Below are positions 2,265 through 47,600 of a DNA stretch of 64,000 nucleotides, one piece after another; positions within the stretch are counted from its first letter, which is position 1; every line of letters starts with the position of its first letter. The DNA comes from Podarcis pityusensis (taxonomy: Eukaryota): NCBI GenBank assembly GCA_964106645.2, contig OZ067038.1; one strand, given 5' to 3'. The position numbers and the translations under genes are program-made. Below the pieces are notes generated by a model. The model searched no databases and was not told the DNA's origin. It saw only the letters and a list, made by a program, of their open reading frames with translations.

Positions 2265-3004
2265 TTCATTTCTACTGAATTACGGATCCAAAGACTATTT
2301 ATGATGCCGGCACAGATCACCACCTACATCTTTTTTTCCGATTCTGATGATGGAGGGGACAAAATTAGCTGGTCACAAGTTTAAGTGACTGCAAATGATG
2401 TTTCACTGTGCATCAGCAATAATAATAATAATAATAACAATAACGTATTTGGATAGATATTTGTAAATGATGTGCTGTAAGCGTCCTTAACAAACAAACA
2501 AAAATTGTCACGAGCACGGACAACTGTGGTAATATTTGTATATTCCTGAAAATAACAGGTGCTTCTTTCTTTAGTGCAAACTGAGTTATGCTTGGTGCAA
2601 ACTGAATAGCTAATTATGTGCAGCCGACTGTCTCAGCGGAACCACTGACTTCATCAGATATTTGTGAGAGCTACATGGTGTACTGTGGAAGCGAATGAAC
2701 TCCAGTGTGGGAATTTGGGGGTGGGGGTATATGAAAGAGGTCTGATTTTTTATATGACAGAGTTTATATTTTTCTCTAGTGTTTCTTCTAATTAATTTTT
2801 CAAGAAAAAGAATAACAAGTTATTCTGTAATAAGGTACTTGATTCACAATCACAGATTATCTGCTTTGTTTTAAATGATGGTCAGTAAATTATAATGCGT
2901 TCTGCACTATGATTGCTAAACATGGAGAAATCTCTGGCCTTTTGACACACAGGCTGCAAATGGTGAGGTACAGTCCATCTTTTTCTAATGTATGTATGAT
3001 TTCT

Positions 3005-3010
3005 AATAAA
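3005..3010 (+). terminator. Probable DENND2B polyadenylation signal AATAAA
   Basis: AATAAA about 740 nt after the stop, preceded by TGTA motifs and followed by TG/T-rich sequence. Confidence 0.6.
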
Positions 3011-4889
3011 TTGTGTAAATACTTGTGTCAAATGTCATTCATTAGAATTCTTCTGATGTTGGCTGCTGCCTCAATACTAAATGAATAACTAGATTTACTT
3101 TGAAGTTGTATAACTTGTGCTGTAAATCCCTTAGGAACACAGTGGGATTTCCCCCCCAAGTAGATATTCATAGGACTGGGCTTGACAGCCCAAAGTACTA
3201 AACCATTGTTTTAAACCTTGTTAGAAGCTGACCTCTGCATCTTGGCAAAGTAACACTCAAACTAATAGAATTTACTAACTGTATCCTGAAAATCCTAGGC
3301 ATTCCACTTGCAGAGTGGGACTTGTGCAACTCCTGAGGGCTGAGTGATTTGTTCCTTTAGCCTTATTTCTTTAAAAAGCTAGAATTCCTGGTCATCCAGT
3401 GGAATCTATTGGCATTGCTTTTTAAGCAGACATTACCCAGTGCATTTATGGAATATACCGGTATTTAAAGAGGGTCGGGGAACCTGTGGCCCTCCAATGT
3501 TATTCAACTCCCATGAGCCCCAGAGAGCATGGCCAGTGGTCAGTCCCAATAACACCTGAAGCACCACATGTTTCCTATCCCTGTATTAAAAAATGTAGCA
3601 GCGACTATTAGCTTAGATGGGTTGAGAACGTCATAGACAATTGGTCTACTTAAAAGCAAAAACTTCAAAGTAAATGTTTGTTCATCAGGTCATTTTTCAT
3701 TGTTCACAATGACTTTCTGCATATAAAAAAATGCCCCGATAATGGATCAATGGCACTTTAAAAGGAGACTGCAACATAAAACTGGTGAACTACAATTGAT
3801 CAAGAGTGTCAATGTTACCAATGGGATTAAAAATAAATAAATCACACTACAAGTGTTAATTGGCATACTGATGTCATGATTAACCCAGTTGGATTTGTGT
3901 GCGTGAAAATGGCCACTATTAATAATGCAATTATCACACTGTATTTTTCTGCATTTCCTTTCCTTCGAACCTTACTGTTTAAGGTTCCATACCACCATCA
4001 GTACTAGTGGATGCTCTGCACAATGCCTGTTCCTTTGGTTATGAAATATCAATGTGGTGCAGTGGTTAAATGAAGAATCATCCATTGGGTGGGGAGCGTG
4101 CGCTATGGGCACCTCTTAAGAGACCACATCCCATAACCTTGCATGCACCATCTCCTCAATATGAGTGTTAAAGTCAAGTGCTCACTGAATCCGCCATAGC
4201 CTGCTCCACATTAAATCCCACACTTAAACCCTTCTATACGTTCCACCTCACACAGCCCCCTACGGAACTCCACACCCCACTGATATCCCAGACACACACC
4301 AAGCACCATACTGAGATTCTCACTGATAACACTTCCAGTATTTATTTTCTCACAGAAACACAGTGATGTAGGACCCACTGGGGTTCTTATTCTTATTGCT
4401 CTTACTCATCAAGAAAGCAAACTAAACCCATGCACTGCACACCAGCTTTTAACCTTTCTTCAATCTCTTTTTAACAGCCAAAATTGTGTCCCGTCCCCCC
4501 ACTTTTAAAACCCTTAAACGTTCTCTTCCAATAACCAACGTTACTCCTACAACGAGCAACAAGACTCTTCTCTAAGATCATTTCAGAACAACGCAATGAA
4601 ATGAAGCCTCTGGCTGCGCGCTCTGGCTAAACTTTTGCATCGGCCACCTCTACTTCCTAACCCTAACCCCTCTTGCCCCGCACATGGAGGAGGCTTACTC
4701 AGAACCGGAAGTGAGGCATGAATGCGTGATCGTGAGCGGCGGAAACTGCGCTTTGAGACTCGTTGACCCATTCCCCACCCCCACCCCCGCCGCGCGAGAC
4801 ATCGCGAGAAGAGCGCGCTTCCCCGGTTCTTTTGTGAAAGCTCGCGAGAGAGGCCTCTCTCTCTTTCCCTCTGACTCTGGCCCAGCAAG

Positions 4890-9927
<5,038 letters not shown>

Positions 9928-9953
9928 AGGATTTTTCTATGTATCCAGACTTC

Positions 9954-9959
9954 AATAAA
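9954..9959 (+). terminator. RPL27A: RPL27A polyadenylation signal AATAAA
   Basis: AATAAA 26 nt after the stop codon; short 3'UTR typical of ribosomal-protein mRNAs. Confidence 0.85.
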
Positions 9960-11310
9960 CACAATTTCAGCTGTGTATTCATAAGCTTAAAATTTGAAAA
10001 GTATCTCATTGCCAATTCTAATACTCCTAACTTGATTTTTTTTGGGGGGGAAGGTCCATCAAGAGAGTAGTTTTTTGTTCAAAATGTTTTCTTGCAGCTA
10101 TTTCAGTGTACGAGCACAAAAGTGGCACAGGAGTCAGAATTTCCGTTTCAGCCCTTCTCATTGTAAAGATAGGCTTAAACACATGAACCTTGTTTTGTGA
10201 AATTGAATGTGTTTGGAGTGTTCTACATGTGAGAGAGCACCTGCACACGAGCAGTTCAGACCATGATACCAGTGGCTTTTGTCCCCTACTGGGAACGTGT
10301 CTTTCTGTGCCAACTGGTTGTGGTTGCCCAGAATTTTGATTGTATGCCATAGTCTTAAGGTGACCATGTTCACATTATTCTGCTGTTTAATACATATGTT
10401 TTTTAGGTAGTAAACTATGTGCAGTTCACACCAGCAGATGTGAACAAGAACAAACTAGCTATATATTATTTTTAAGGAAAAGCAGAAACATTTTACAAAT
10501 TTAGGCATCTATTTAAATTGAAATGGTTTTTCTTCGGAACTGAATGATTCCCTATGCAGGACATAATTTGTTAAAAAACATATACCAGGACTCTTAAAGG
10601 CAGCTCACAAATTCCAGTGTACACCCAGGAACCAGTGGCATTACCATACCACTCAAACTTCTCTTCAAACTTCTTTAATGGGATAGTCACCACTGGCATT
10701 CTCCAGCAGACTACTGGATGCAGGAAATGTCCTTTTCGTGTATCAGGGAGGAGAGGGGATTTTCACTGAGCCCCCTCTATCTACAGTCTTAAAGGTTCTA
10801 GAGCAACTTTTCAGAAAAAAACTGGTGAAAAATCCTCTGTACTTTAATATTACACAGGAACGTGGGAGGACAAAGCAGAAATAACTATTGGTTAAGCTAA
10901 AGGCTTGTGCATAAGTTAAGTGGTGTATTAGTGGCTGTGCCAGCACTGAAAAAGCGTTCTCATGGTGCCCAGAGCAGAGCATCAGTGAGGACTAATATGG
11001 AGAAAGATGCTCATAAGGGACATACCTGGACATTGTAAAAAGGCAGTACTTTACCAGGATAAGCTGGCTACAACCTGTTTTGGATCCTACATGTTCCACC
11101 AGCTAATTTTGTTTTTCAAAGTGGGCCTGGGCCATAAAGGAGGATCAAGAAAGTCCCTCCAACACCAATCTGTGTGATTACTTTGTGCAATTTTGATGTT
11201 GTTAGTCCTATGAACATTCACTGGAGACACATCCACTGGAACGCGTTCCTCAAAATTATATCCTCATGTAACAAACAAAAACCAAACAACTTCAGCTTTT
11301 ATGCAAACTT

Positions 11311-11316
11311 TTTATT
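11311..11316 (-). terminator. Poly(A) signal of the minus-strand snoRNA host transcript
   Basis: TTTATT on + (AATAAA on -), followed on - by a GU/U-rich element GTTGTTTGGTTTTTGTTTGTT (about 11291-11271). Confidence 0.6.
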
Positions 11317-12361
11317 AAAAAATGGAAGTATTCCCTCAATATAAACTCAAGCCTATTCAGAACTATTTAAGAATTGCAATACAAACTTAAGTGGCACTAG
11401 CAACATATCAGATGTGCAGAACCCTCAGACTGGATGCAGACTGACAGAAACAAGTTTACTGAAACATTTGTGGAATGACATACCCAGATTGAGATTAGAA
11501 AGTTGTGCTGGCCGAATGTAAGGTTGATGGAGAACAACTTGCTTCTGTTAAACATATTTGTAGTTTTAAGAGTTTTGTAACAGAAGGCAGCTTCCAAATC
11601 ACTACCAGTACACCCAAAGCAATGGTCTCTGACTATAACATAGATGTAAACAAGCATTTTTGGTACTTGATAATTTAGACTTCTCAAAAGGATTACAAAT
11701 AACCATTATTTTCCACTTTAAAGTTAAGAGCGAGAACTGGACGCTTCAGTTGAAGCCAGAAGCCACCACACCCAATGTGACAGATGGGTGTGGTTTGGGT
11801 GTTCCAGGCCAAACTGGAACTGTGATGGGCTCCCCCAGCCATGAACAGAACACAATTGAAATTTTAACATGTAGAACACTATTCTTAAACTGGTAGGTAA
11901 GGTAGTAGCCTGATCCAAGGTGGTTTGCAACAGGAGCAGTATCACCATGCAAATATATGGTAAAAGAGTAAGAAATGGGTTGCTAAATTCATGTTTGGTT
12001 TAAAACCGGGTCCTGGGCCTGAAAAGGTTGAAGATGCCTGTAATCCAAAGTCTATATTTGCTCCTCACAAACTTACCAAGACTACAAAATCAGCAGGTAC
12101 TCTTAATCCAGCGTGGTTTGGGGGCTCATCCACTTAGCACACAGAGTTGATCTGGTGCATAGTTTCCCCCCCCTTCAAGCAGTAAGGTCTCGTAACAACT
12201 TTTCCAAATAAACTGGATGGCTACAAAGGAAAAAACACAATGCAATGTTGCTGTGTGGCTCATTTTTACTTACAAATCTCTTCCCTTGAAACTCTTTACT
12301 CACTTTAATCAGCACTCTGCCTCCCCCAATTTTCAGAAAGTTCACTGGAATTCAGGTGTAG

Positions 12362-12492
12362 GTCTGTCACTAACCTGGTGACTGACTTTGCTACAGAACA
12401 ACAAAGTCAGTGAATAAAGATTAGTTTTTCTCTCCGAGTACTATAGCACACCACAACGACTGAAGACATCAAGATGTGACTCTAGTCTCGAT
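12362..12492 (-). ncRNA. SNORA3: Second H/ACA snoRNA SNORA3/ACA3 family copy, intronic in the RPL27A-derived host
   Basis: Reverse complement is 131 nt: ATCGAGACTAGAGTCACATCTTG...TGGTGTGCTATAGTACTCGG-AGAGAA(H box)...CTTTATTCACTGAC...GTCAGTCACCAGGTTAGTG-ACA-GAC; roughly 80% identical by eye to 7255-7385 with guide-pocket sequences unchanged. Confidence 0.9.
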
Positions 12493-12609
12493 TAATTATA
12501 GGTACACAAGCTTCTTACTCATTTACTGTTTCAACCCAATACGCTAATTCTGTCTAGAACTGTAAACACATATTTTATTTCAGAAACAGAAAGACTCTCA
12601 CCAAAAAAT

Positions 12610-13210
12610 GATCGCGCGCCTGCTTGAACTTATTCGCTCCTTTTAAACCCTGCTCCCCGCTACTCACCACGTGAAAGGAAGAAGGGAAGCAGGAAGCGGA
12701 AGAAGACCTTCCTCAAGGAACCTCCCACAATGCTCTCAGGGTGCGTGCGGGGGGGGGGAGGGGCACATAGAACGGGAGAGAGAAGTGAAGCTCGGCCATT
12801 CCTGGAGCGGCAACACAGCCTGCACTTCCGGTGGCCATTGAAAGCCGTCACGCTGTGGTGTAACTGTGCCGCTCCAGCCCTGTGGCAGCTCTATGATAAA
12901 TGCCCGCTTTGCACTGGAGGGGAAGGGTGGGGCGGGAAACCAATCCAGGGATATACCGGAAGTTTTCGCTCTCATCGAAGTGTAACGCAGTTAGCGTCAG
13001 GAAGGCGATGACGTCACCTAGCTTTTGGTCTTGCCACTCAAGTGGGAGGAGAATTCAGCAGAGCCCCTGTTGAGGGCGGGAAACTTTCCTCAGCGCAAAA
13101 AAAAAAAAAAAAAAAAAGCAAGCTCCTAACACCTACCATTGGCTGATATATTTTTTAAAGAAAGGCTTCGCCTGTGGAGGTTTTCCCCTCTCCTCCCTTG
13201 AGCGTAGTGG
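12610..13210. promoter_or_regulatory. CpG-rich, probably bidirectional promoter (minus-strand snoRNA host; plus-strand TRIM66)
   Basis: Minus-strand TOP-like tract CTTCTTCCGCTTCCTGCTTCCCTTCTTCCTTT (12705-12674); ZNF143-like CTCCCACAATGC 12722-12733; ETS/GABP CACTTCCGGT 12823-12832 and ACCGGAAGT 12955-12963 in opposite orientations; GC boxes about 12930 and 13074; CCAAT about 12940; perfect CRE TGACGTCA 13009-13016. Confidence 0.75.
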
Positions 13211-14038
13211 GCGGTATCTGTGCTTTCAGTCAAAACTGTATTCTTGTGGCACCTCAAACACTTACAATTTATTAGAAGGCAGTTGCTGGTGAGCCTTTAA
13301 ATGCAGCCCTCTTCGCTTGATAACGTCACTGGAGAATGCAAAATTGGAATAAATCCCAGCCAAGTCATTTTGTTGTCCTTTTGTATCCAGCGGGGGCCCT
13401 TGGTCCCTGAACTGTATGTTCCTCGGAGTGCAGCCTTGCCATTCAGGCATGCTCAGAAGCGAGTCCTTTTGATTTCAGGGGTACTGACTCCCTGAGGCTG
13501 CACAGCTATACACATCTGGGACTATGTCCTATTGAACTGAGTGAGCAGAGACTTTCCTCTGAGTAGAAACAGCTAGCATTGGCCTCGGGCTGTCGATATT
13601 TATTCCGTACAGTACTTCATTAATGAAGCCACCTGCTGTGCTGCTCCCCTTTCTCGCTTGATCTTCCAAGAAGCAGCTATATCCTAACTAGCCTTTTCAT
13701 TTTCCGCGTTGGGAATGTGATGTAGTATCACTTTGCAGCATAGTGGGAAATTTAATAGGTGGCCACCCAGCACTGCTTGGAACACTTGCTATTTACTATC
13801 AGTGCCAGGTACTCTGGGTGTGTAAGGTATAAGGCAGTCTTAAGGAAGCTGGTCCTGAGCTGTATAGGGCCTTACGTGGTCAGGGATCGTTGTCTCTCTA
13901 ATTGTGTGTTATTCCACATTTCTCACTGCAGCGGTTTTGTGTTATGCCATACCAGCCCCATATCAGCCATTTTGTCCCCAGCACCCTCTCAAAAGTCATT
14001 ATGTGTCCACTGGCCCAAAAATGTTGTCAACCCCTGGT

Positions 14039-14260
14039 ATAATAATAATAATAATAATTATTATTATTTATTATTTATACCCCGCCCATCAGGCTGTGTT
14101 TCCCCAACCACTGTGGGCAGCTTCCAACAAAACACTAAAATACAATAACCTATTAAACATTAAAAGCTTCCCTAAACAGGGCTGCCTTCAGATGTCTTCT
14201 AAAAGTTTGGTAGTTATTTTTCTCTTTGACATCTGGTGGGAGGGCGTTCCACAGGGCGGG
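14039..14260 (-). mobile_element. LINE 3' end fragment (L2-like)
   Basis: (AAT)n(TTA)n tail then TTTATACCCCGCCCATC...GGGAGGGCGTTCCACAGGGCGGG; same family as 5363-5428. Confidence 0.6.
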
Positions 14261-15147
14261 TATAGGTCAGATTAAAATAAATGAGAAAGACTTGGGGGAC
14301 GGGTGAGTAAGCTGTGCTCCCCCCACCTCAAGAAACATAACTATTCCAGGGCAAGGGGACATATTTGTCTTCTTGACTCCAAAGCCTAAGTTCAAACAGT
14401 GACAAACCCATATACACATCTTTAACATCAGAATGATGCAATGGCACGGGGCAAATCTGACACTAGGTGGCCTGACTTGTGCTAAATGGGCCCCAGAGCA
14501 AAATTGATATTTTTGTGTGAGCATTTCTTGTCCCCAGAAGATCCTGGAAGATACACTTCCAAGCAGGAGATGAACTAAAATCAGGGGCATGATGTTACAA
14601 ATGAATGTTATAGAATACACAAGTGCCTTTGGCCACCATAGTAACAAAATCCAGGAAACAGGGCACATATTTTATTGTGTTCCATATGTCATGGAAGGGT
14701 TAGAGCATACACCAGTCAGAAAACTCAACATGAACTTCATTGTCTCTACAATACAGAACAGCAATAGCAAACTCCTGATTCCTCCAAGTACATTTAAATA
14801 AAGTACCACCTGGGGATTAAACTATATGATGACACTGTCTACACACAAAAATAGAAAGACTGGACATTTTCATTTGTTCCTAGAAACTCCTCTGTTTTAT
14901 TGTAAATAATTCATAGTGTGTCTAATAATTGCAGTTATATGCATCTCCCAGGGATAACAGTTTATTTCCTGAGCAAAATGTAATGGGATTGCTCAGCCAA
15001 GATCATGCAAAGAAGTCACATGCATCTTAGATAATTACATTGGGAAAAGAAGAATCTGATATTTTGCTGACCCACCAATGGAATATAAGGTTTGTTTTTT
15101 ATGTCGGACTACTGACCAACTACATAATTTTAGTGATACACAGCAAG

Positions 15148-17561
15148 GTTTTTTTTAAAAAATGATATTTATTACTTTTTCAAAATTTCCAACACAGCAC
15201 TACAAACAAAGAGAAAAAGAAAAAAAATGGGCAAAAAAGAAAAAACAATACGAATACAATACAAAAACGCTACATGGACTAATAAATCAAGCAAAAACAA
15301 ACAAAAACAATTTAAAAACACCTCAAACATTTTCAGTATCTTATATTTCATTCACTTATTTCCAGCGACTTCCTCACACCTCCCTTTTTGTATTCCACTT
15401 CTATTATTTGTTTCAGCAATTCCTTTCCATCTTACTCTGTTTTCTGTTCTATAATTATCTTAACACATTATTGCCATACTTTTCCTTTAATTTTCTATTA
15501 ATCTATTTATATTTAATTCCTTATGACATTTCTACTAAAGTCATGTAATTTCATTCCAACATTTTTCTAACATTCCTTAATTTTACAATATTTCTATAAA
15601 TAGTCTTTAAACTTTTTCCAATCTTCTTCCACCGACTCTTCACCCTGGTCTCGGATCTTGCCAGTCATTTCCGCCAATTCCCTATAGTCCATCAACTTCG
15701 CCTGCCATTGTCCAACACTTCAGTGTTTTCAAGAAGCAACCATTCTCTCAACCAGCAAAAGGCAGATGGTTCACAACGAAGTTTAAAGGTCTGGCAGGGC
15801 AGGTCCACCTCCTTCTTTAGCATCCATCAATATCTTAAGCTTAACTCGAGGCTTCCTGCCCTGCCAAACAACTCTAGGAGCATCCCTCTGCCACCTCCTG
15901 AGACCCTCCATCCCATCCAGAGCTTGCAATGTTTGAAACAAAAGCAACATCCCCAGCAACACAGCAGCCCTCATCCCCACCACAATGACTCGGCCCAACA
16001 GTAACAACTTCTGATTTGTCCATATTTCCAAATCCCCCTTCTCTTCAATCCAACATCCTTCACAGTTGTCCTTAAGCAGATTCACATTTTTGGCGGTCAT
16101 ACTAACCCCCAAATACCTCTCTTTCTCAACCAATGTTAGTCCTGTCGCCTCCTGAAACTCTGTCAGGCTTTCCTTTTCCAATTCAGATAGGGCTCTGGTC
16201 CTCAAATTCATCCGTTCTTCTTTAAGTTCAATCATAACGAATGTCAGCTTATGTTCATCAAGTTGTCTTTGTATAGATGGGACTCTCCTCTTCAGTTGTA
16301 TTACTTTAAATTCAGCAGCAAGGGTTTTTTCCCTGACTTCATCTGCAGTTTGCCGTATCAGAGTAGATTCCTGTATCAGTTTCTGGGTGGTTTCTGAATT
16401 GGTATTCACCTTTTGTCCCAAATTATTTAAACTTTCTACAATTAAATCAGTTTCAATATTTGCAACATCCAATTTCACATTTATCGCATCTGTTTTCTTA
16501 TGGAGTTGTTCCAGCGAATCGTTTATTTTCAATAATGCAGCCACTAAGGCCTCCTCTGTCGACATCCCGTCTGTTTTTTCCTTTCCGTTTGCCATAACAC
16601 TTAAGAGATTCAAGGTCAATTCCAAAGTTTCACACTTTTCTTATCTTGCAGCTGGAAATTCCCCTAGCCCAGCTCCTATAAAGTAACCAATTTCAAAAGC
16701 TTCCACTAGGGGAAAACAGGTTGTATTTGTATCGGTCAATATGTCCTCTTTTAAACACAGTTTCAATAATCTGAAGTTAGTTTCAATTTTCAGTTACTTT
16801 CCTCCTTTTTTAAAAACAAGCGGAAACAGTAGAAACAATGTATTTCTCTTATTTAGCTAGCTGTCAATGAACGTTCTAAGCGCTGTCAATGAACATTCCA
16901 AAAAAAACACCAAAAAAACCCACATCAGTCTTACTAGCAGCCCGTTTCCAGGGTCAGAGCGGCGGTGTTTTAAGCCTCTTTGCTCTCTCCCGCAGGCATA
17001 CTCAATCCACAACTTCCCCCTCTCTTCTCCTGCCTCCAAGAGGGGGTTTAATGTTCTTTACCGTTGGAAATTTGATCTTTTACAAAAGACCTTCCAGGAC
17101 TCCAGCTTGCAACTTCGTTGCCTCAGTCTATTTACAAAAAGGGAAGGCGGACTTCCTGTTTTGAACCTCCCCGTTACGATACCAAATTAAACTTTTAGAG
17201 ATCCAATTCTTCCGTTTCAGCTCTACTCACGGGTAATTACTTTAAAGTCAAATTGTCCACAGGAAAAGGTCAGCGCTCTCCGGCAACAGCTATGCGGCTT
17301 CGCTCCGTGGAAGAAGCAGACGATTCGATGCACCGCGCCACTCACCGCACGTCGCTCCGGAGCCCCAAAAACCGGGGTTCCCCGCGAGTGGGGGAGGCGC
17401 AAAAGGTGCCCGCTGAATCCCACGTTCACAGGCTTCTCCTGCCTGTGATTTTAATGGGTCTCCGCCTTCGTCGTGGCGGCCAGACCCAGATTTCCATGGA
17501 GCAGATTCCTCCTGGTCAGGGGAATTCTGCCATTGCTGGAGGCGCCTCCCCCGGAAGTCTC
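15148..17561 (-). mobile_element. Internally deleted, full-ended L1-clade element (2.4 kb) with chimeric ORF1/ORF2 ORF (15783..16625)
   Basis: 13-bp TSD GATACACAGCAAG at 15135-15147 and 17562-17574; A-rich tail at about 15149-15156; GC-rich 5'UTR starting GAGACTTCCGGGGGAGGCGCC; ORF N-terminus coiled-coil-like, C-terminus YLGV...DLEIW...LFQTL...WQGRKPRVKLKIL...GG.ALPDL typical of post-RT L1 ORF2. Confidence 0.85.
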
Positions 17562-20500
17562 GATACACAGCAAGTTTTATCCTATGAAAATATGCTGCAT
17601 AACCAGGTCTTGGGCAGATGCTTCTTATATTGTGTAGAGTTTTTCTTGCTTTTCTCTTGGTAGTATTTGAATAACAGAACTTTCTGGAAATACTGTATAT
17701 GATCATTTTAGGATCCCAGACCTTTATATGAACTTTTCACTACTGCACCAGCATTCTGCAGGTAAACCCTTTAATTAGTGAAATGTTTAGCATTTAATGC
17801 TGGGTGCTTAGACAGTCACAATTTGTGGGTATGGTTCAGTGGCATACTGGCAAATGCTATGTGTACAATTGACATTAATTTGGCATTCTTGCACACACTG
17901 GAAAGTGTGGTATAACATTTGCTTGATATAATGTCATATAGCCTCTCCTCAAATTTTGTGCAAACAAATCAGGTAGAAGCTCAACAAACAGTCTGCAAGC
18001 AACTTTACTGTGCTACTGACCTCTGTAGTGATGGTTCAGACACTAGTGACTGGTCCAGCATCCTAATGACAAAGAATGAGAAATCTTTCTTACACAATCT
18101 CAAGCTTGGGTCACAGTTTAATGACATTGTTTCTCAAATTATTCAATATTTTCAAATCCACCATTATTGTCTGTGTTCTTTTTACAACTGTTCTGCTATT
18201 TGACAATTTATTTGGCTCAATATAAAGTTCTGCTAGAGATGCAAGAAGGAAGCAAAGCTGAGTACCTTAAGCAAATATATAACCTTAGGGCAACATCATG
18301 CTTACAAAGCTGTAAGCCCCTGCTCTGTTCACTGGTGCTTACTCTTTAGTAAGTATTCTGTGGATTGCAGCCTTAATATAAAAAGCTCAGAGTTTACTGC
18401 TGGGAGAGCCTCGCTGAACTGAAATGAGTAATAGTCACGCCAGTGAATCACTCTCTGGCTCATCTATCAGTGTTGTCTATCTTTTCCTTTATGCTTCTCA
18501 CAAGCAATCTACCTTTTTTATTTTCAAAAGCCAGCTTCAGCTGCAAATTTGCAAAAACAGCTTGAGCCTGGAGAGGAAAGATGTGCTTTGGTTGAACATA
18601 TGGAGGACACCATCATTCAGACAGCTCCAGCTTGTTGAGTAAGAGAGTGCTGTTTACGTTCTTTCCTTAAGGTGGGGGCTGTGGGACACACACACACTGT
18701 AGTCATGAGTGTTTGAGGACTCACCTACCCATCTCTTTGCTTAGGGGAAACAGATGGAAAAGATGCAAGAGTTATGCTGTGATGACTTGGAGGCATGGTC
18801 TGCCCTTCCCTGGTGAGTTGCCTTTCCTTGCTTACTTACCTTATCCTTGCACCTCAGCAGTGGAGCTGAGGTTCTTAATGGGTGTTTGCATCTGGAGTCC
18901 CATGTTCCTGTGAGTTATTGTGAAAAAAAAATGTTAACAACATTCCTCTCCTTCACACCAAGTATTCCTTTTCATCAACATTTGAAGGTCTTAGTTGTCT
19001 ACCATAAGATAGAGCCCCATGTCCTGTGCCACGATGTATTTATATATAAATAAGCTGTGTTATGTTTCTGGAGATGATATACCCCTGTGATTTGTTTTTG
19101 AGTTATTTTAGACCCCTGTCCTATGATATGGTATGACAGCATGGTAGAGTCGTGATCGTGGTCATAGCACAGGGCAATCACCTTAGGCTGTCCACTGATC
19201 CCTTAGTTTTATTTAACTTGCTCTGTCTTTTAATTTGGTATGTTACACTGTTGTTGCAACTGACTTCTGTGCATTAGATGTCAACTGTGCCCATTTAGTC
19301 ACTTGTGTTAGTGAGTACTGTGGTAATAATGCCAGTGTTGAATAATGCTGGTGCAACAGGGGCCTCTTCTGTGTCTTCTTCTAGGGCTCTGGAATTCTCT
19401 TTGGGGAAAGTGTGTCTCACTGTTTCTTTAATGGCCTTCCAGAAGCTAGAATAAACTTTTCTATGTAAGAAGGATTTTTGTTTACAGATGATGGCTTTAT
19501 TGAATTGGTTTTACTACTCTCTCTACCTGTTTGTAATCTGAAAACTGTTTGTAATTTTTGAAAACTGCTCCGTTATTGTTTTTCCATTGCTGTTTATAGT
19601 ATTTTAATGGTTTTGTAACTTATGTTTTAAATTGTTAGCTAATGGTTTGATTTTGCTGCTAGTCACCTTGAGCCTTTTTATGAGGACAGGCAGGGTACAA
19701 GTGTTGCCAGCAAACTAACCCACTACTCTGATTCAAAGTTTTGTTCTGCCAGCATAAGGAACTAGTAGTGATCCTATCCCCATCAAGTGGTTGTAATTCA
19801 AAGGCAGAATCACACTGTCGGTGCTTCCAGACAGTCACAATTTTCAGGTGGATTTCAATCATATGCTGGCAAATTCAGGTTGTGCAATTAAAGTTGATGT
19901 AGAGCTATTTCACGACAAGCTCACTTCCTTTCAAAATTGGACATTTTGCAATAAGGAAAGTGATGAGAAAATGCATTGGAATGTTTGAGATAACATTTGC
20001 TTGCCGGAGCATTGTCTAACCTCCCCAGAAACAAATTGGGATGAATGCTCAATAATTAGCCAATGTCAGCTCACCTCCTTGAAAACTTTATGCAAAGAAA
20101 TCAGGATGAAATCTCAGTAAACAGGTTGCCTGGATGCAAGCAGGAACTCTGCCTTGGGTTGTTCCCATGTTGTATTGTATGTGTGCCTGGGATTGCTTTT
20201 GCCCATAGCAACTTGATGGTGCACTAAATCCCAAGGGTGCTTTTTCAATCAGAGAGCAGTTTGGGTGGTTCTGTGCTGTGAGCTGCTGCGGCTCAAACTA
20301 AGGGGAAATCTGCAAGTGTGAGTACGGATATGTTGCACACATTTTACTTAGCTTTTCTGGGGTGTGGCAGTGATGGGGTAGGGAATGGCAGCAATATTTT
20401 TTTAGCATGCCTCAGTCAATTCAGAAAATGCCTGACTGTGTCTGCCAACAGATTCTGCAGTCTGTAGAACAGGGGGCAGGAACGGTAATTAATTATGTGT

Positions 20501-22037
20501 CTCACATCTTTTGTTATAAATCAGGAATTATTATGTGCTTAAAAAAACAGAAGAGAAATGACAGGGCAAAGAATCAATCAACAGCGATATTCTCATAGGC
20601 CCACACAAGGCACCAGGTGCAAATCTCTAATTAATATGTCAGGAATCTGAAAAGGAAGGAAAACAAATCTGAATCTCAGTAAAATGATGTTACTGTGTGT
20701 ACTGAACACCATTGAGAGGCAGTGAAAGACAGGAGATATCCTGATTTGAGCCCAGCAAAAAGTAGTCTTTTATGTGTTGGATATTGTACTTGATAACTTT
20801 GACTCTACAGCTGTGACAAGGCTAGGCATGATCACAGACTGAATTATGTGGCTATCTATTCCATGATAAAATAATCAATGATGAATTTGGGGCTGACCCA
20901 TCTATACGATGAAAGGGACATTTTTCTTCACCATTGGGCATTCAGAAATTACTAAATAATCAGCTGCTGAAATGGGGTGGGGAGCAGTGGTTTTCCGAGG
21001 GAGGGAGGGTAAGGAAAGAGCTCATGGCCCCATTGGGGCAGGGTTAGCAGCATGTTATATGAAAAGAGATGGACATCTTTGGAATAGACAGCGAAGCAAG
21101 CATACAGATCCGGGTGGTAGAGTCATCTGAAGTTTTCTGATAGGAGGCGTAACTCCTGTATTTTGTGAATGTAAGTCCTACACTGATTACCATGAACATC
21201 CGGTTTTCTTCTGTGTCCTCTCTTGTATCACCCACACGTGGGAAAAATATTTTGAGAAAGCCTCAAAGGTGTTATTTACTGTCTTGACTGAAACATTCAC
21301 ATCCATAACTTCTGTCCAGGACACCTATATGTCTTGGAATAGCCTTGAGTGAACTAATCACATAGCTGTAGATGTGGGAACAATTTATTATTCATTCTTG
21401 TTCATAACAGAATAGTAATCTGGCAAATGTATTTATCCATTTCAAACTTGTTTGGAGGACCAATGGATATTGTTTGAAGCTGCTTGGAAGGGACTTGCAT
21501 GGCCATGCCAGTAAGAAGGCTGTGGATAAAAATGAGAAAGCCAAGGTAGGCTGAACTCTGTGGGCAACTATACGGGCATCATCCTAAAATTTATGTGGGA
21601 GTTTAAAGCTGCATATAAACTACTAAGCCCAGTTTCCTGGAGATAAGCCTCATGCGACACAGTAGGAGTATACGGTATAGGATTGGGCTGTTAATGACAT
21701 TGGCATGGGAGGGAGCTAGCTGTGAAGGACAGGTGCCTTTAGAAAGCACATGTGATGCACATGGCCTAAAAGTATCCTGCTATTGTCCATGCTTGCTGAG
21801 TGCAGGGACAGGAAACTGCTGACATTTGAACTCAGCATGTTATGTGGCTTTAAAGAGATCAGTTGTGCCGAATGTGCATGTCTGAGCCCGGGGAGTGGAG
21901 GGAGCCCTTTTGTATCCAGCTTGTGTGTGTGTATGTGTGCGCATCTGTCAGTACTTTTCCTTATTATGTACAACCTGGTTAGCAGCATCCCTGAACAAAC
22001 CCTTTTCCTGAGAAACAAATATATTCTTATTGGTTAT

Positions 22038-22600
22038 TAAAGGTAAAGGACCCTTGGACAGTTAAGTTCAGTCAAAGGCGACTATGGGGTGCGGTGCTCA
22101 TCTCGCTTCAGGCCAAGGGAGCCAGCATTTGTCCACAGACAGATTTCCGGGTCATGTGGCCAGCTTGACTAAACAGCTTCTGGCGCAACAGGACACTGTG
22201 ACAGAAGCCAGAGTGCACAGAAATGCCCTTTACCTTTCCACCACAGCAGTACCTATTTATCTACAGTCATACCTCGGGTTGAATGTGCTTCAGGTTGAGT
22301 GCTTTCGGGTTGTGCTCCGTGGCAGCCCGGAAGTAACAGAGCGCGTTACTTCTGGGTTTCGCCGCTCATGCATGCGCAGATGCTCAAAATGACGTCACAC
22401 ACATGCACAGAAGCGGCAAAATGCAACCTGAGCACGTGCTGACGTGCCATCACGTCTTACATTCTATTCAGGATGCGAACGGGGCTCCGGAACGGATCCC
22501 TTTTGCATCCCGAGGTACTACTGTACTTGCACTGGTGTGCTTTTGAACTGCTAGGTTAGCAGAAGCTGGGATAGAGCAATAGGAGCTCAGCCCATCGTGT
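22038..22600 (-). mobile_element. Sauria-type SINE interrupted by a MITE
   Basis: AAAGGTAAAGG tail, GGTGCTCATCTC...GGGAGCC...GGTCATGTGGCCAGC...TACCTATTTATCTA; resumes CTTGCACTGG...GAACTGCTAGGTT after the MITE. Confidence 0.75.
22264..22523. mobile_element. Tc1/mariner-type MITE nested in the SINE
   Basis: Imperfect TIRs CAGTCATACCTCGGG / CCCGAGGTACTACTG with TA duplicated at 22262-22263 and 22524-22525; related copy at 56960-57189. Confidence 0.8.
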
Positions 22601-37400: not shown

Positions 37401-40400
37401 AATGCCTCTATATTGAATCATAACTAATAATAATTACTAATACTAAAAAGTCTTAATAATGTCTTTACATGTGCAAACCATTCTACATTGCAGAATTTGG
37501 AGGATAGGGCCCAAGGACTGTGAGGTAGAGTCAAAGGACGGGTCTAATTTCAGGATTTGTGAAAGTGCTTCCCATAAAAATGCCATTCAGGGAAAATCCA
37601 GTTCCAGTGTTCTTTACCTTGCCTTTGATGCTTGCTTGTTTCTCACTGTTTAGCTGTCCACATTAGCAACTATGTGCCACCTTTTCATTCCGTTGCAAAG
37701 GTGAGCCAAGGAAACCAGGAGGAAGCATAAAACTGGAAGGTCAGTTCCAGAAAAGCATAGGGAAGATTCTAAAAAGCACTTTGAAGACAAAAAGTAATAG
37801 CTGTAGTCTACTTAAAGCTAACATTGCCTGGAACAGCCTGCAGCACGCCCCCATAACCCTCTGGGGGGTTCATCATGCTAACAGAATTGCCTGGGAACAA
37901 CAACAAAAACCTTGAGTCAGATTGATATAATGACATAGGTGCAGGGAGAGTGGCTTTAACCCTTTGCTCCTGCTATTGTCCTTATTAGAACTGGGGTCCC
38001 ACATGACTGCTATCTGCAATAGGAGCAAAGCTTGTGGAAAGATTCTTAATACGAAAACATGCTGTATAGATTATCACACTGTGAAATAATAATATATGTA
38101 GTACATAAGAACATAAGAAGAGCCTGTTGAATCAGGCCCATAGCCCATCTAGTCCAGCATCCTTCTCTCACAGTGGCCAACCAGATGCCTGTATGAAGCC
38201 TGAAAGCAGGATTCGAACACAAGGGCACTCTTCCCTCCTGTGGCTTTCAGAAGTACTGCTGCCTCCAGCTGTAGTGGCAGTGTACAAACAGTACAAAATA
38301 GCTGTAAGCATATACAGCTGATCAGTTATCATGGAACCCCATGTAGGGTATAAGGTAAATGGAATAACCAAAATGTTTATTGATATTTCATAACCCTGGA
38401 ATTAAAAGTTGACAGGATGCCAGTCTACAGCCTGTTTTGTCCATTGCCTTGTTCAGGAATCGCCACATGTTTAGTTAAGAGTGTTGTAGAATCAACACAC
38501 ACATTGAAAAATCAGATAGCACAACTAACCTTACGCTAAGCTATGCAGCTGCGGTGTGCTTATAATAAACAGAGAATCAATAATTCCTATCTAAAATATC
38601 TACCCAGGAATATTATATGTATATGCCTGTCATTTTTTATGCTTCCTATCTTTCCAGTGAGTCACTAGTTCTTCTTTTTGGCAAGCCATAAGAAGCCTCT
38701 CAGCTTATATACAATTTTTCACAATTTGATGTTTGAGAGTGTTTTCCTTATCTGTGTACTGAAGATTAATTTGGCAAGGTCTCATCCGGGCCGAGCCTGC
38801 TATGTCTTTCTAAGAGGTACACCCATGGAAAATGCAAAGCAAAAGTGAAGAGAATGCCTTCAAATATATGCAGAATGCTTTCCCCTCGATGCTTTGTTAA
38901 CATTGTTTATCTGAATTGTTTGAACTCTGCTTTGTCGCTTTCCAAACATACTCTGTCTACTAGGGTATTCTCCCAGCCATCTGTTGTGTGCAGAGAGCTT
39001 TTCATACAAAACTGTGTGCCGCAAACAGATATTTGCGTGACAATTCTTTTTGTGTAATCAGGACTGTGGCTCAATGGTAGAGAATCTGTCTTGCATCCAG
39101 ATGTCCGCAGATTCAATCTCTGGTGTTTTGTTGTGCTTTTATATATGTTGAAAGCTCCCCAGAGTGACTGGGGAGGGCAGGATATAGATTTAAAAAATAT
39201 TATTTATAATTATTATTTTCTATACCTCAACATGCTTTTGACTTGCAAAAGTGTAAAAGATGTGCAATCTTTAAAAAGTCCAACTTCCACATTTGCATTA
39301 AGTTTAGACATCTCTGTAAGTTAATGGGAGTCACCCCAAATTTAAGTTTAGTTTTATTCAGGTCTAAGCTGTTGTTCTTGTTCTTGTTGTCATTGCAGAA
39401 TTGCTCTGGATGTAAAGAGAAGAGGCCTGCACACAGTCTGTGTACTAACTGCAACAAGTGGCTATGCAGCTTGTGTACAGAAGAGCACGGGCATGGCAAG
39501 GAAACAGGAGACAATTTCTTGCCTATACCATTGAAGGGATGTTCAGGTAGAAATGTAATCTCATGCGGTTCTGTTTTTGCCAAACTTCACAGTGAAGTGC
39601 CACTTGTCCCCATTAAACAGCTGACTTGTGTCACCTGCCACCTGCACTGCTTCCTTGCTTGCTTGCTTGTTGCCTGCCATTCTGTTGCCACACATTCTGC
39701 ATGCCAACGACCTTACATTTTTATGTATATAGGAAGAAAATTGCTATTTTCCTTAGAACAAGGAGTGCACCAAGGGAAACTTACATCTGGGGAAAATATT
39801 CTTACAAATGCACTAGAATGCAAAGTCAGTCCTCCAGCAATCTCTACCCATTCCAGAGTCCTCTCAAATTCCTCAGAAACTAAATGCAACATAGATAACT
39901 TATTGGAATGTTTTCTCCACAGACAAAGTAGTGGAGATTTGTGGAGAGCATCAGTAGCTTTAGTGTGTAGGTGTTTAAGGTCTTTACTTCTGAAGGAAGC
40001 TTCAGAAATCCCCTGGGGATTTTTGCCCACCTTTGTTGAAATGTTTTCTGGAATCAAGGCCCCCAATTCCTGTCTTCAGTATGCAAAATGAGACTGGGAG
40101 AATCTAGCTTTTCATTATTTGTTAATTTCATTAATTTAAAATTCATGCAGTGATAAGCATAGAAGAAAGATGCCAGATAACTACATTCCCATCAAAAGAA
40201 AACATGGCACCAAAGTTAATGCATACCCTAATAAAATATGCAACACTGCTACATACAAGTGGCAGTTTAATAAAGTATGTAACATGCTGTATTATACATT
40301 ACATCTAGATGAGGCAAAAGCTGGTTGTGAATTTGAGGAAATGAAGTTGAGCAAGTCTTTGGAATGGGAACTTGGCTGGAAACTTGCCTTAAGAATGTAA

Positions 40401-44690: not shown

Positions 44691-47600
44691 GGCATCATCA
44701 CAGTTCCAATGACTATGTTGAGTAGTTTCTTTTGTTTCTGACTCTTGACAGAGAATCACCAGTGAAAAGAAGCAGAAACTGGAACAACAACTTCAGGGCA
44801 TCATGGTGTTAAACAGGCAATTTGAACACGTGCAGAACTTTCTGAGCTGGGCAGTGTGCAGTAAAAACAGTGTTCCATTCCTCTTCAGTAAGGAGCTGGT
44901 AAGTCTAAATGCTCACTACAATCCCAAAATACAAAAAAAGGAAGGGAAGGGAGAAAAACAAGTCCCCAAAGAAGCTAATGGGGAAAATGCATGAACTCTT
45001 CTACTGTACTGGTGGCTCAAGACTTTTAAGAGTACTTCTAGGTCTCCCAGAAGCTGAAGCAAAATGGAGGTTGGCAAGCGACTCCATTAAAAAGTTAATA
45101 CTGCATTAGTGGGAATCTTTGTGGTGGCTTCTGCTTGGGCAGTGCATTAGTTGAATATGGCCTAATATGTTTAGAAACTTCTGTTTTGAGTGGAAATACA
45201 CAGATTAAAGTGGAAATGGGACAGTTGAATTATGGGCAAACACATGCAAAAGTGGCATGGTCTGGAAGTTTATTGATTTGCCCATCCCTAGTCCTTATAT
45301 AGATTGAGACTTCTTTTCATGCTAAAACATGGTGCCAATCACCCACACAACCAGTCATCTGGAAGCATATACTGTATAGTGCATATACAGTGCATAGGAT
45401 GTTTTCTTGTGATCAGCATGGGACTTTAGTGCTGACCCAGAAGCATAGGAAATGGAACAAGATCCAGTGCCTTTCCCCCCATGCTAACACAGTCATTCAC
45501 ATAATGCCTACCTCATTCATGATTTACAGTAGCTTCCCATTACTTTCATCTAGAGTGGGACAGGATATGGAACTGGTGTGAACTGAAGATACAGCACAAT
45601 ACTGATGCATTTATGTATTTAAGTATGTATTAATTACCTGTCTTCCGAAAAGGCAACCAAGACAATGTAAGGCAACATGAACTAAAAATCTGCATTAATA
45701 TGTAGGAGCTAAAGCAAATAATGAAAATACAAAAGGTACACATGTGTACTGTAAAGAGTAAATGCCCATAACAAATAATTAGACCCCCTAAACTAGCCCT
45801 GTGTGGTGCAGACCTGGCTGTCTTATGAACGCAGACTTACTTCTGAGTAAATATACATAGGATTCCATTTTGCTGAATCAATAATATTCCAGATGAGGCT
45901 AGTGTGAAAGAGAGATCCTATGCTCACAGCTTGCAGGGCAGCAGCTGAAGAAGGAGCAAAAAGGGTTTTCTTGTGTGTGTGTTTCTTTGTGGCTGATTAG
46001 CTGCTCTCCCTGTGCAAAGGTCAGAGGGGGCAGGGTTTCTGTTGAGGCAGGTGATTAGCTGTGGGAGGAGCTTATCAGAGCTTGCAGGGCAGCGGCGCAC
46101 ACAGTTTGATCCATCTTTTAGATTTAGGGGAGCTAGTCTCAAACGTTTGTTGGGGGAGACCTAGGTTTTTTTGGGGGGGAGTTATTTGTCCTGTCTTCAC
46201 GCTTTTTATGATGGAGGACCGCTGTAGCCACCCCCAACGACACGTTCTCAAGATGGAGGGGGAGGGAACAGCTGCAGTCGCCTGCGGTTCCTGCGCAATG
46301 TTTGCCATCTTGCCAAAGGTTGCAGGCAGCTTTACCTGCAGCAACTGCATGTTGATTGCCCTCTTAGAAGACAAAGTCCAGCAACTGGAGGAACGTGTAG
46401 CTACACTCCAAAGAATTAGAGAGCTGGAGCTCTTCTTGGAAGCAACAGAGCACACCGTCTCCACCAAGGAGGAGACAGGGGACTCCCCTGAGAAGGAGGC
46501 TAGTTCACCAACACAGGAGCCAGATATATGGAGAAACGTGACTCAAAGAAGTAGGAGGCCCAGGGTTTGCTCTGATTGTTTAGAAATACACAATCGCTTT
46601 GAGGTCCTCTCCCCTAGCATGGAAGACGAAGAGCAGACTCCATTTGAGGATCTCTCCCTCATTACAGTCGATCAGGTATATGAAGACGAGCAGCAAAGTC
46701 AGTCCTCAGGGAATGTGCAGGCGACCTTGGAACAGACAGCTCACGGAAGAACCCCGACCAGACCTAAGAGGAGGCGTGTAGTGGTGATAGGGGATTCCCT
46801 ACTGAGGGGAACAGAAGCAGTGATCTGTGGGCCTGACAAGATGTCTCGGGAAGTGTGCTGTCTCCCCGGGGCTAAGATCCAAGATGTAACTGAACGACTG
46901 CAAGGAATCATAAAACCCACTGACAAATACCCCTTCCTCTTGGTTCACGTGGGAACCAATGACACTGCAAGCAATAGCCTCCAGAAGATCAAAAGAGACT
47001 ACGAGGCTCTGGGCAGGAAATTGAAGCAATTAAATGCACAAATTGTCATCTCATCTGTCCTCCCAGTTGAACGGCGTGGCCCAGGGAGAGAGGGAAAAAT
47101 AGTGGAAGTGAACAGCTGGCTTCACAAATGGTGTAAACAGGAACGGTTTGGATTCTTAGATCATGGACTGCAGTTTCTTGAAGATGGACTTCTGGCAAGC
47201 GATGAGCTGCACCTCACAACGGTTGGGAGGAATGTTTTTTGCCAAAAATCTCAGAAACCTCATCAGGAGGGCTTTAAACTGACTAATGTGGGGGAGGGAG
47301 ACAGTGCTCCTGAAGGTAGGAGTCTATCAATTGATGAAGATGATCATCCAAATGTCATAGACCAAATGGAGCAAACAGCACGCAGACCTAGTGGTGGGAG
47401 GAAAAAATCCTTAAATAAGAGACACGGGGGAATGATTAATGGACTTCAATGTCTGTACACTAATGCGCAAAGCATGGGAAATAAACAAGATGAGCTTGAG
47501 CTCTTGGTACAGCAAACTAAATATGGCATAATAGGCATCACTGAAACCTGGTGGGATGAGTCCCACGATTGGAATGTAATAATGGAGGGATACAATCTAT

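What the first reader, a model, noticed from the sequence alone, without database searches (positions are those of the whole stretch)
11295..12706. Ribosomal-protein gene turned non-coding snoRNA host: inverted, coding-dead RPL27A paralog that keeps its TOP start, splice sites, poly(A) signal and SNORA3
Seen: on the - strand there is a pyrimidine-tract exon 1 ending GTG|gtgagtagcg (the functional RPL27A has ATG|gtaggtagcg, so the start codon appears lost by A>G). Next come an intact SNORA3 at 12492-12362 and a 144-nt exon (12220-12077) alignable to RPL27A exon 4 at both ends but frameshifted and 31 nt shorter, with a good acceptor (tttttcctttgtag) and a perfect donor (gtaagt). AATAAA plus a GU-rich element lies at about 11316-11271. 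The snoRNA sits upstream of the exon-4 homolog, the same relative position as in the functional gene. Established: intronic H/ACA snoRNAs need a transcribed, spliced host, and non-coding hosts such as GAS5/SNHG are 5'TOP genes whose exons evolve freely. Inference: coding constraint was lost after duplication while transcription and splicing signals were kept to release the snoRNA. This would capture the birth of an SNHG-type lncRNA from an RP gene, and is likely unannotated or labelled only as an anonymous lncRNA.
Basis: partly seen in the sequence, partly recalled or inferred. Interest (0 to 1): 0.92.

Follow-up and report, generated by a model that had tools for sequence, protein, structure and literature searches.

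The report
Ribosomal gene copy turned snoRNA host
In the lizards sampled, one of two old copies of a ribosomal-protein gene no longer makes protein but is still spliced and keeps an intact small guide RNA in its intron, while turtles and crocodilians keep both copies coding and a bird has lost that copy, which gives a rare step-by-step view of how a non-coding snoRNA host gene arises.

Summary
Window 12706-11295 (-) is a coding-dead RPL27A copy with an intact SNORA3 (98.7 bits). The window is a lacertid lizard. The same dead copy lies in all seven other squamate assemblies fetched at this locus (five lacertids, Rhineura, the skink Lerista). All keep GTG|gtgagt, the exon-4 acceptor, a poly(A) signal and SNORA3, and none tested has a conserved ORF. 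It occupies the marsupial RPL27A slot, head-to-head with TRIM66. Turtle and gharial have two intact coding copies here; a bird keeps only the other copy. Contigs from two probable RNA runs of relatives join the exon-3 relic to the exon-4 relic across the SNORA3 intron (30/30 match to prediction). In Rhineura the coding copy's SNORA3 is broken and the dead copy's is intact. Corrections: this is an old event, not a recent birth. This species has also deleted exons 2 and 3 and the exon-5 acceptor, and its own exon 1 to exon 4 splice, start site and mature snoRNA are untested. Pseudogene hosts are known (human RPL32P3, CCT6P1), so this is a new member of a known kind with an unusually complete lineage series. 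No earlier scan finding on other DNA was found.

The parts
12601..13200 (.). CpG-island promoter of the dead copy, facing TRIM66 head-to-head; has ETS-type and CCAAT motifs; the TCTCGCGAGA-type motif next to the start of coding copies is absent
   Evidence: CpG o/e 0.63-0.72; motif scan; 87-98% conserved in lacertids, 62% in Rhineura. Promoter activity is inferred.
12668..12706 (-). Exon 1 relic (39 nt): 5'TOP-like pyrimidine tract, former ATG now GTG, donor gtgagt
   Evidence: GTG|gtgagt in all 8 squamate loci; matches ATG|gtgagc of turtle and gharial copy A; no ATG. Not covered by any RNA contig, so the start site is inferred.
12221..12667 (-). 447-nt snoRNA-bearing intron, a fusion of ancestral intron 1 and intron 3 made by a deletion of about 1.6 kb at 12591/12592 that removed the exon 2 and exon 3 relics
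   Evidence: L012-L014 carry 1.5-2.0 kb more at this point; L010 and L011 share the deletion; length
12362..12492 (-). SNORA3 H/ACA snoRNA, intact, 141 nt upstream of the acceptor
   Evidence: Rfam RF00334, 98.7 bits; fold; 91% identical to Rhineura and 85% to Lerista, against 62% and 58% for the flanking intron; compensatory pairs across the family
12077..12220 (-). Exon 4 relic (144 nt), frameshifted; first ATG at 12160 opens 8 codons; acceptor conserved in all 8 loci, donor conserved in lacertids only
   Evidence: RNA contigs branch at 12222 and 12076 as predicted for spliced forms
11907..12040 (.). Interspersed repeat fragment inside the intron-4 relic
   Evidence: many unrelated contigs match only this part (tables 7 and 8)
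11317..11323 (-). Junction of a second deletion that removed the exon-5 acceptor and exon-5 relic
   Evidence: L012-L014, L001 and L002 have the acceptor and a 106-126-nt relic here (404 nt in L014, which has an insert); window, L010 and L011 lack it
11271..11316 (-). Poly(A) signal AATAAA (11316-11311) and GU-rich element (11290-11271), homologous to the end of RPL27A exon 5
   Evidence: AATAAA in 7 loci, ATTAAA in L013
4890..9927 (+). Working RPL27A (copy B): exons 4890-4892, 6361-6424, 6718-6793, 8268-8442, 9799-9927
   Evidence: exon 4 is 100% identical to Varanus and Rhineura uL15 proteins
7255..7385 (+). SNORA3 in intron 3 of the working RPL27A; no copy in its intron 4
   Evidence: 100.5 bits; no weaker SNORA3 hit in 3000-16000
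20511..20684 (+). TRIM66-side conserved segment; the TRIM66 B-box exon lies at 39390-39584 and the DENND2B dDENN exon at 92-325, both on +

Best explanation
This is a non-coding snoRNA host gene descended from RPL27A itself. An inverted, tail-to-tail duplication, probably in the sauropsid ancestor, gave copy A (old slot, head-to-head with TRIM66) and copy B (next to DENND2B). In squamates copy B took over making the protein. Copy A lost its ATG and reading frame but kept a CpG/TOP-type start, splice sites and a poly(A) signal. RNA polymerase II transcribes it, the intron before the exon-4 relic is spliced out, and SNORA3 is trimmed from it to guide rRNA pseudouridylation. The exonic RNA is probably a disposable by-product cleared by NMD. 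In this wall-lizard clade two deletions reduced the host to exon 1, one snoRNA intron, the exon-4 relic and the poly(A) site. SHOWN: homology, synteny, loss of frame, selective conservation of the snoRNA and splice sites, a spliced junction in two relatives. INFERRED: start site, splicing in this species, mature snoRNA from this copy, its guide activity, NMD, and the date of the duplication.
For: The dead copy with an intact SNORA3 is in 8 of 8 squamate assemblies at this locus. SNORA3 is more conserved than exon or intron: Fisher p about 2e-9 against Rhineura, 2e-10 and 3e-7 against Lerista. Stops occur in all frames and no ORF is shared. Five splice dinucleotides are kept in lacertids, Rhineura and Lerista where three-way intron identity is 0.44, a rough chance of 3e-4. 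The loose end at 12222 in run X18 equals the predicted exon3>exon4 junction of L014 at 30/30 nt, and X17 matches 27/28. Contigs branch at 12222 (X1) and 12076 (X18) as predicted; X18 depth is 77.6 on the exon and 12.5 on the downstream intron. In Rhineura the coding copy's SNORA3 has a deletion of about 19 nt and no longer folds (65 bits, z -0.6), while the dead copy's scores 94.5 bits, z -4.4. Turtle and gharial have two intact copies. The marsupial single gene is tail-to-tail with DENND2B. The exon-1 donor signature links the dead copy to copy A.
Against: No run of the window's own species is recorded as RNA, and the four runs are only guessed to be RNA. Exon 1 has zero depth in all four. 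The junction seen uses the exon-3 donor, which this species has deleted. No small-RNA data were available. Lacertids have other intact SNORA3 copies (RPL27A intron 3; a third RPL27A locus, L003), so the need for this one is unproven. Trees put the dead copy with squamate copy B (exons 94/99, SNORA3 91/97, neither starred), which needs gene conversion or a fresh squamate duplication. Much read-through of the 12077 donor is seen (X17, X1).
Confidence: 0.8

Rival explanations
1. Same function, different history: the dead copy is a fresh stem-squamate inverted duplicate of copy B (or was fully overwritten by it), not the descendant of the turtle and crocodilian copy A.
For: The exon tree groups dead copies with squamate copy B (94/99). 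All squamate SNORA3 copies form one group (91/97). No flank homology between the squamate promoter and turtle or gharial copy A was detected.
Against: Same slot and orientation as turtle and gharial copy A and the marsupial gene. Exon 1 ends cGTG|gtgag like copy A's cATG|gtgag, unlike copy B's agATG|gtagg or gtggg. The clade 'dead copies plus copy A' is not rejected (AU p 0.064). Dead rows were projected onto the window's copy B, which biases the tree, and they are long branches.
Confidence: 0.2
2. The host works in other squamates but has been crippled in this Podarcis-like clade by the two deletions, so here the snoRNA is a recent relic or is made poorly.
For: Loss of the exon-3 donor and the exon-5 acceptor. 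Run X2, whose pieces include 11361-11630 (absent from L012), shows only flat depth of 3-6 and none over the snoRNA.
Against: The deletion leaves a canonical 447-nt intron with a strong donor and acceptor. SNORA3 is 131/131 identical in the three assemblies with the deletion, while the exon has 2-4 differences (weak, short time).
Confidence: 0.1
3. It is a slowly decaying transcribed pseudogene, driven as a by-product of the TRIM66 bidirectional promoter, with no selected role.
For: Head-to-head position with TRIM66. The bird lost the copy altogether. Other SNORA3 copies exist.
Against: The snoRNA is far more conserved than neighbouring exon and intron across deep squamate splits. Other SNORA3 copies in the same dead gene did decay (Rhineura intron 2 and intron 4 relics, the latter 29.6 bits), which shows what neutral decay looks like here.
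Confidence: 0.04
4. The spliced lncRNA has a selected function of its own beyond releasing the snoRNA, for example through the conserved first 50 nt of the exon-4 relic or by regulating RPL27A or TRIM66 in cis.
For: The 5' 50 nt of the exon-4 relic is 83% and 73% identical to Rhineura and Lerista, above the intron background. Exon contigs reach depth 58-111 in three runs.
Against: Exon content differs freely between lineages: exons 2, 3 and 5 are deleted here and most of exon 4 is not alignable in Rhineura and Lerista. The conserved 50 nt next to an acceptor can be a splicing enhancer or a gene-conversion tract.
Confidence: 0.08

Closest known systems
RPL32P3 (human ribosomal protein L32 pseudogene 3, host of SNORA7B; PMC6509762, PMC11833636)
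   Same: A ribosomal-protein pseudogene that is transcribed and hosts an intronic H/ACA snoRNA whose paralogue is SNORA7A; HGNC lists it among non-coding snoRNA hosts.
   Different: SNORA7A and SNORA7B are over 98% identical (PMC6509762), which points to a young duplicate. Here the two SNORA3 copies are 82% identical, the non-coding state spans skinks to lacertids, the dead copy holds the ancestral slot, and sister lineages show the both-coding and the lost states.
CCT6P1 and CCT6P3 (pseudogene hosts; CCT6P1 hosts SNORA22; PMC6466398, PMC11833636)
   Same: Pseudogenised copies of a housekeeping gene kept as snoRNA hosts.
   Different: Chaperonin rather than ribosomal-protein parent; the papers read give no adjacent inverted arrangement or deep lineage series.
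GAS5 / SNHG non-coding snoRNA host genes (5'TOP family; Smith and Steitz 1998, cited in PMC7073466 and PMC6466398)
   Same: TOP-like start, spliced non-coding exons that evolve freely, conserved intronic snoRNA.
   Different: Here the protein-coding ancestor is still recognisable exon by exon; the window species carries one snoRNA, Lerista two.
[quoted passage not shown] 2017, PMC5577775)
   Same: A coding locus recycled as a lncRNA at its ancestral position.
   Different: That study attributes sequence retention mostly to enhancers and does not mention snoRNAs (0 hits); here the retained cargo is an intronic snoRNA and the protein gene survives next door.
SNORA3/SNORA45 family in RPL27A (Rfam RF00334; PMC13736004)
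   Same: Same snoRNA family and, for copy B, the same host.
   Different: That survey describes SNORA3A hosts as ribosomal-protein genes; a non-coding RPL27A-derived host was not found in the passages read.

Membership tests
H/ACA snoRNA SNORA3 (RF00334) | Full-length covariance-model match above the gathering score | tested here: met
   98.7 bits against 51, model positions 1-131
H/ACA snoRNA SNORA3 (RF00334) | Two hairpins, H box (ANANNA) in the hinge, ACA three nt from the 3' end | tested here: met
H/ACA snoRNA SNORA3 (RF00334) | Guide pockets pair with rRNA target and direct pseudouridylation | not tested
   Pocket-flanking columns match the coding-gene copy and are almost invariant across amniotes; no lizard rRNA sequence was on hand, so pairing was not computed
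H/ACA snoRNA SNORA3 (RF00334) | Mature RNA accumulates from this copy | not testable with these tools
   No small-RNA data; only contigs were laid
Non-coding snoRNA host gene (SNHG/GAS5 type) | snoRNA lies on the same strand inside an intron with donor and acceptor | tested here: met
   Intron 12667-12221; splice sites conserved in 8 loci
Non-coding snoRNA host gene (SNHG/GAS5 type) | Host is transcribed and the snoRNA intron is spliced (relatives) | tested here: met
   Exon3>exon4 junction in runs X17 and X18, branch at the acceptor in X1; RNA status of the runs is the tool's guess
Non-coding snoRNA host gene (SNHG/GAS5 type) | Host is transcribed and spliced in the window's own species (exon 1 > exon 4) | tested here: inconclusive
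   No RNA run on record for this species; exon 1 uncovered in all four runs
Non-coding snoRNA host gene (SNHG/GAS5 type) | No conserved ORF in the spliced exons | tested here: met
   Stops in all frames in five species; window spliced model has no AUG ORF of 20 aa or more
Non-coding snoRNA host gene (SNHG/GAS5 type) | 5'TOP: transcript starts at C followed by a pyrimidine run | tested here: inconclusive
   Pyrimidine tract with C at 12705, 35 nt before the former ATG, similar to the spacing in the coding copy, and kept in 8 loci; start site not mapped
Non-coding snoRNA host gene (SNHG/GAS5 type) | Spliced RNA is an NMD target | not testable with these tools
   First ATG gives 8 codons with the stop 57 nt before the 12077 donor; compatible, not shown
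Unprocessed (duplicated) pseudogene of RPL27A | Keeps the parent's exon-intron order, with disabled ORF | tested here: met
   Relics of exons 1-5 in order in Rhineura, Lerista and L012-L014
Retrotransposed snoRNA copy (snoRT) | Isolated snoRNA copy without host exon-intron context, with poly(A) tail or target-site duplication | tested here: not met
   The copy sits in its ancestral intron-3 position among RPL27A exon relics

The most novel reading that the evidence does not exclude
The original vertebrate RPL27A locus split its two jobs after a sauropsid duplication. In squamates the parent locus became a dedicated snoRNA host, kept for well over 150 million years, and in some lineages (Rhineura) it supplies the only intact SNORA3 at this locus. 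With turtles and crocodilians (two coding copies), birds (copy lost) and lizards (stepwise loss of snoRNAs and exons), it would be a dated, complete series for the origin of an SNHG-type gene from a ribosomal-protein gene.
Probability: 0.55. Interest if true: 0.72.

Novelty: new member of a known kind. Interest (0 to 1): 0.6.

Why it matters
Non-coding snoRNA hosts such as GAS5 share 5'TOP starts with ribosomal-protein genes, but their exons change too fast to show where they came from. Here the ancestor is still readable, living lineages show the states before and after, and natural deletions show which parts a host can lose (exons 2, 3 and 5, extra snoRNAs) and which it keeps (start region, one donor, one acceptor, the poly(A) site). 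That makes the 'coding host to non-coding host' route directly testable. It also flags a conserved squamate gene for which no protein-coding gene call appears in any of the seven assemblies fetched, and a sauropsid RPL27A duplication that my literature searches did not find described (a blank search is not proof of absence).

Tried and rejected
Searched the window's dead copy for exon 2, 3 and 5 and intron homology: none above shuffles; explained by deletions. Tested whether it is a 3' extension of a neighbouring minus-strand gene: rejected, because DENND2B and TRIM66 are both on +. Tested whether it encodes a new protein: no shared ORF; the exon-4 relic piece had no Pfam hit, but the intact exon 4 had none either, so that test says nothing. 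Acceptor at 12559: lies in sequence that is intronic in Rhineura and L012/L013, rejected as a conserved exon start. Retrocopy origin: rejected, introns and exon order are kept. Looked for a relic of copy A in the bird: none. Coding-exon trees do not resolve copies A and B (AU p 0.20 and 0.26). Loci for Varanus, Natator and Xenopus were not on record. The frog locus showed no called neighbours, so the outgroup orientation rests on one marsupial locus plus my memory of the mammalian gene order. No separate silent stretch could be laid; 12626-13400 had zero depth in three runs. Literature searches found no report of this locus. Spliced models were built only in local scripts; searches used single exons by reference and the joined search was left out.
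Full report
Observation. The window holds an intact RPL27A on + (exons 4890-4892, 6361-6424, 6718-6793, 8268-8442, 9799-9927) with SNORA3 in intron 3, and a second SNORA3 on - at 12492-12362 (100.5 and 98.7 bits). The minus-strand exon 12220-12077 aligns to exon 4 far beyond chance (0 of 2000 shuffles, z 9.4). Within the window alone, exon-1 similarity is not significant (z 1.7) and nothing of exons 2, 3 or 5 remains.

Neighbourhood. Pfam places DENND2B (dDENN, 92-325) and TRIM66 (B-box, 39390-39584) on +. The order is DENND2B(+), RPL27A(+), dead copy(-), TRIM66(+). The dead copy starts in a CpG island facing TRIM66. The window is about 95% identical to two lacertid assemblies, so it is a wall-lizard-like lacertid.

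Other squamates. I fetched the locus from Rhineura (L001), the skink Lerista (L002) and five lacertid assemblies (L010-L014; L012 is Podarcis muralis by its record; from memory of the accessions L010 and L011 are other Podarcis, L013 Zootoca, L014 Lacerta). All seven have the minus-strand copy with an intact SNORA3 (92-110 bits), and no protein gene is called there. Rhineura, Lerista and L012-L014 keep relics of exons 1 to 5 in RPL27A order, so this is a whole-gene, unprocessed duplicate. Exon 1 ends GTG|gtgagt in all eight. The exon-3 relic runs past its old donor to a new one shared by the five that have it. The exon-4 acceptor is kept in all eight, the exon-5 acceptor in five, and a poly(A) hexamer in all eight. 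Translating the joined relics gives stops in every frame and no shared ORF.

Selection. Against Rhineura the snoRNA is 91% identical, the exon relic 59% and the flanking intron 62%; against Lerista 85%, 49% and 58% (Fisher p from 2e-10 to 3e-7). Three-way intron identity is 0.44, so keeping ten splice-site bases by chance is roughly 3e-4 (crude, since alignments anchor on such sites). Spare SNORA3 copies in the same dead gene show the neutral fate: in Rhineura the intron-2 and intron-4 copies are relics, while Lerista still has two intact ones. In Rhineura the loss is reciprocal: the coding gene's SNORA3 lacks about 19 nt and does not fold (65 bits, z -0.6), and the dead copy's is intact (94.5 bits, z -4.4).

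Expression. No RNA run is on record for this species. I laid four probable RNA runs of related organisms on 10050-13400. In X17 and X18 the contigs covering the exon-4 relic leave the window at 12222. The sequence beyond equals the end of the exon-3 relic: 30/30 nt to the junction predicted from L014 for X18, 27/28 for X17. That is a spliced junction that skips the SNORA3 intron. In X1 two contigs overlap by 30 nt ending at 12222, with exon depth 72 against intron depth 8.7. In X18 a branch at 12076 fits splicing to the exon-5 relic, which starts with G (exon 77.6, intron 12.5). Limits: RNA status is guessed, contigs give no strand or start, exon 1 is uncovered in all four runs, many transcripts read through the 12077 donor, and part of the word share comes from a repeat at 11907-12040.

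This species is a reduced version. The window, L010 and L011 lack about 1.6 kb at 12591, which removed the exon 2 and 3 relics and joined intron 1 to intron 3. They also lack the exon-5 acceptor and relic at about 11317-11323. What remains is exon 1, a 447-nt intron with SNORA3, the exon-4 relic and the poly(A) site. The junction seen in relatives therefore cannot occur here; 12668>12220 is predicted and unobserved.

History. A marsupial has one RPL27A, tail-to-tail with DENND2B, the orientation of the dead copy. Gharial and snapping turtle have two complete copies tail-to-tail: copy A head-to-head with TRIM66 and copy B beyond it. Exons 2-4 of all four are open and identical or nearly identical in protein, and exon 5 matches by tblastn. 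The curlew has only copy B, with two SNORA3, and no relic of A. Exon 1 of turtle and gharial copy A ends cATG|gtgagc, the dead copy ends cGTG|gtgagt, and copy B ends agATG|gtagg or gtggg. The simplest reading is one duplication in the sauropsid ancestor (about 280 million years ago, from my own knowledge) and loss of coding in copy A before skinks and lacertids split (about 170-190 million years ago, own knowledge). Against this, trees group the dead copies with squamate copy B (exons 94/99, SNORA3 91/97), though the alternative is not rejected (AU p 0.064). Gene conversion between adjacent inverted copies would explain it; a fresh squamate duplication cannot be excluded.

Mechanism. [quoted passage not shown] The parts conserved here are the ones that route needs, and the parts lost are those a protein needs. 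I conclude that copy A is kept to produce SNORA3, a guide for rRNA pseudouridylation (PMC13736004). Confidence 0.8. Mature snoRNA, the TOP start and NMD are inferred.

Comparison and novelty. HGNC already lists RPL32P3, CCT6P1 and CCT6P3 as non-coding snoRNA hosts (PMC11833636), and SNORA7B lies in an intron of RPL32P3 (PMC6509762). lncRNAs from lost coding genes are also known (PMC5577775). The kind is therefore known. What is new is this member: its age, its ancestral position, the three fates in living sauropsids, the reciprocal loss in Rhineura and the stepwise shrinkage in wall lizards. I found no paper on it. Verdict: real feature, new member of a known kind, interest 0.6.

Method notes. 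Spliced models were joined only in local scripts; search tools received single exons by reference and the joined search was left out.

Noticed in passing
L014:16346-16476 (+): A SNORA3 copy identical to that assembly's coding-gene copy is inserted antisense inside the exon-5 relic of the dead gene, with the start of that exon repeated on both sides; looks like a recent snoRNA retrocopy.
   Followed up: partly
L003:10001-17261: Podarcis muralis has a third, intron-containing RPL27A gene with an open frame and SNORA3 in intron 3 on another chromosome, next to a zinc-finger gene (4 amino-acid differences).
   Followed up: partly
L006:13722-13848 and 17334-22360: In the gharial, copy A has three SNORA3 (one just 3' of exon 5) and copy B has none in the part fetched, another uneven split of the snoRNAs between two coding copies.
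   Followed up: partly
protein P0188 (Euleptes europaea, gecko): An 'L27a-like' protein with 11 substitutions, several radical, and a one-codon deletion; may be copy A caught in decay in geckos. Locus not fetched.
   Followed up: no
L007:11588-14521: The frog RPL27A has a SNORA3 in each of four introns, suggesting stepwise loss of copies in amniotes.
   Followed up: partly
window 12601-13200: The TCTCGCGAGA-type motif found about 80 nt before the exon-1 end in most coding copies (not scored in the marsupial) is missing at that place in every dead copy scanned; ETS and CCAAT motifs remain in lacertids and Rhineura.
   Followed up: partly
window 46055-49540 (+): 1162-codon open frame with endonuclease and reverse-transcriptase domains, a young-looking LINE inside a TRIM66 intron.
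   Followed up: no
window 15150-17580 (-): Retroelement-like insert with a CpG-rich 5' end, a 285-codon frame without Pfam hit and an A-rich tail, between the dead copy and TRIM66.
   Followed up: no
window 11907-12040: Short interspersed repeat, with a hAT/MITE-like end by eye, in the intron-4 relic.
   Followed up: no
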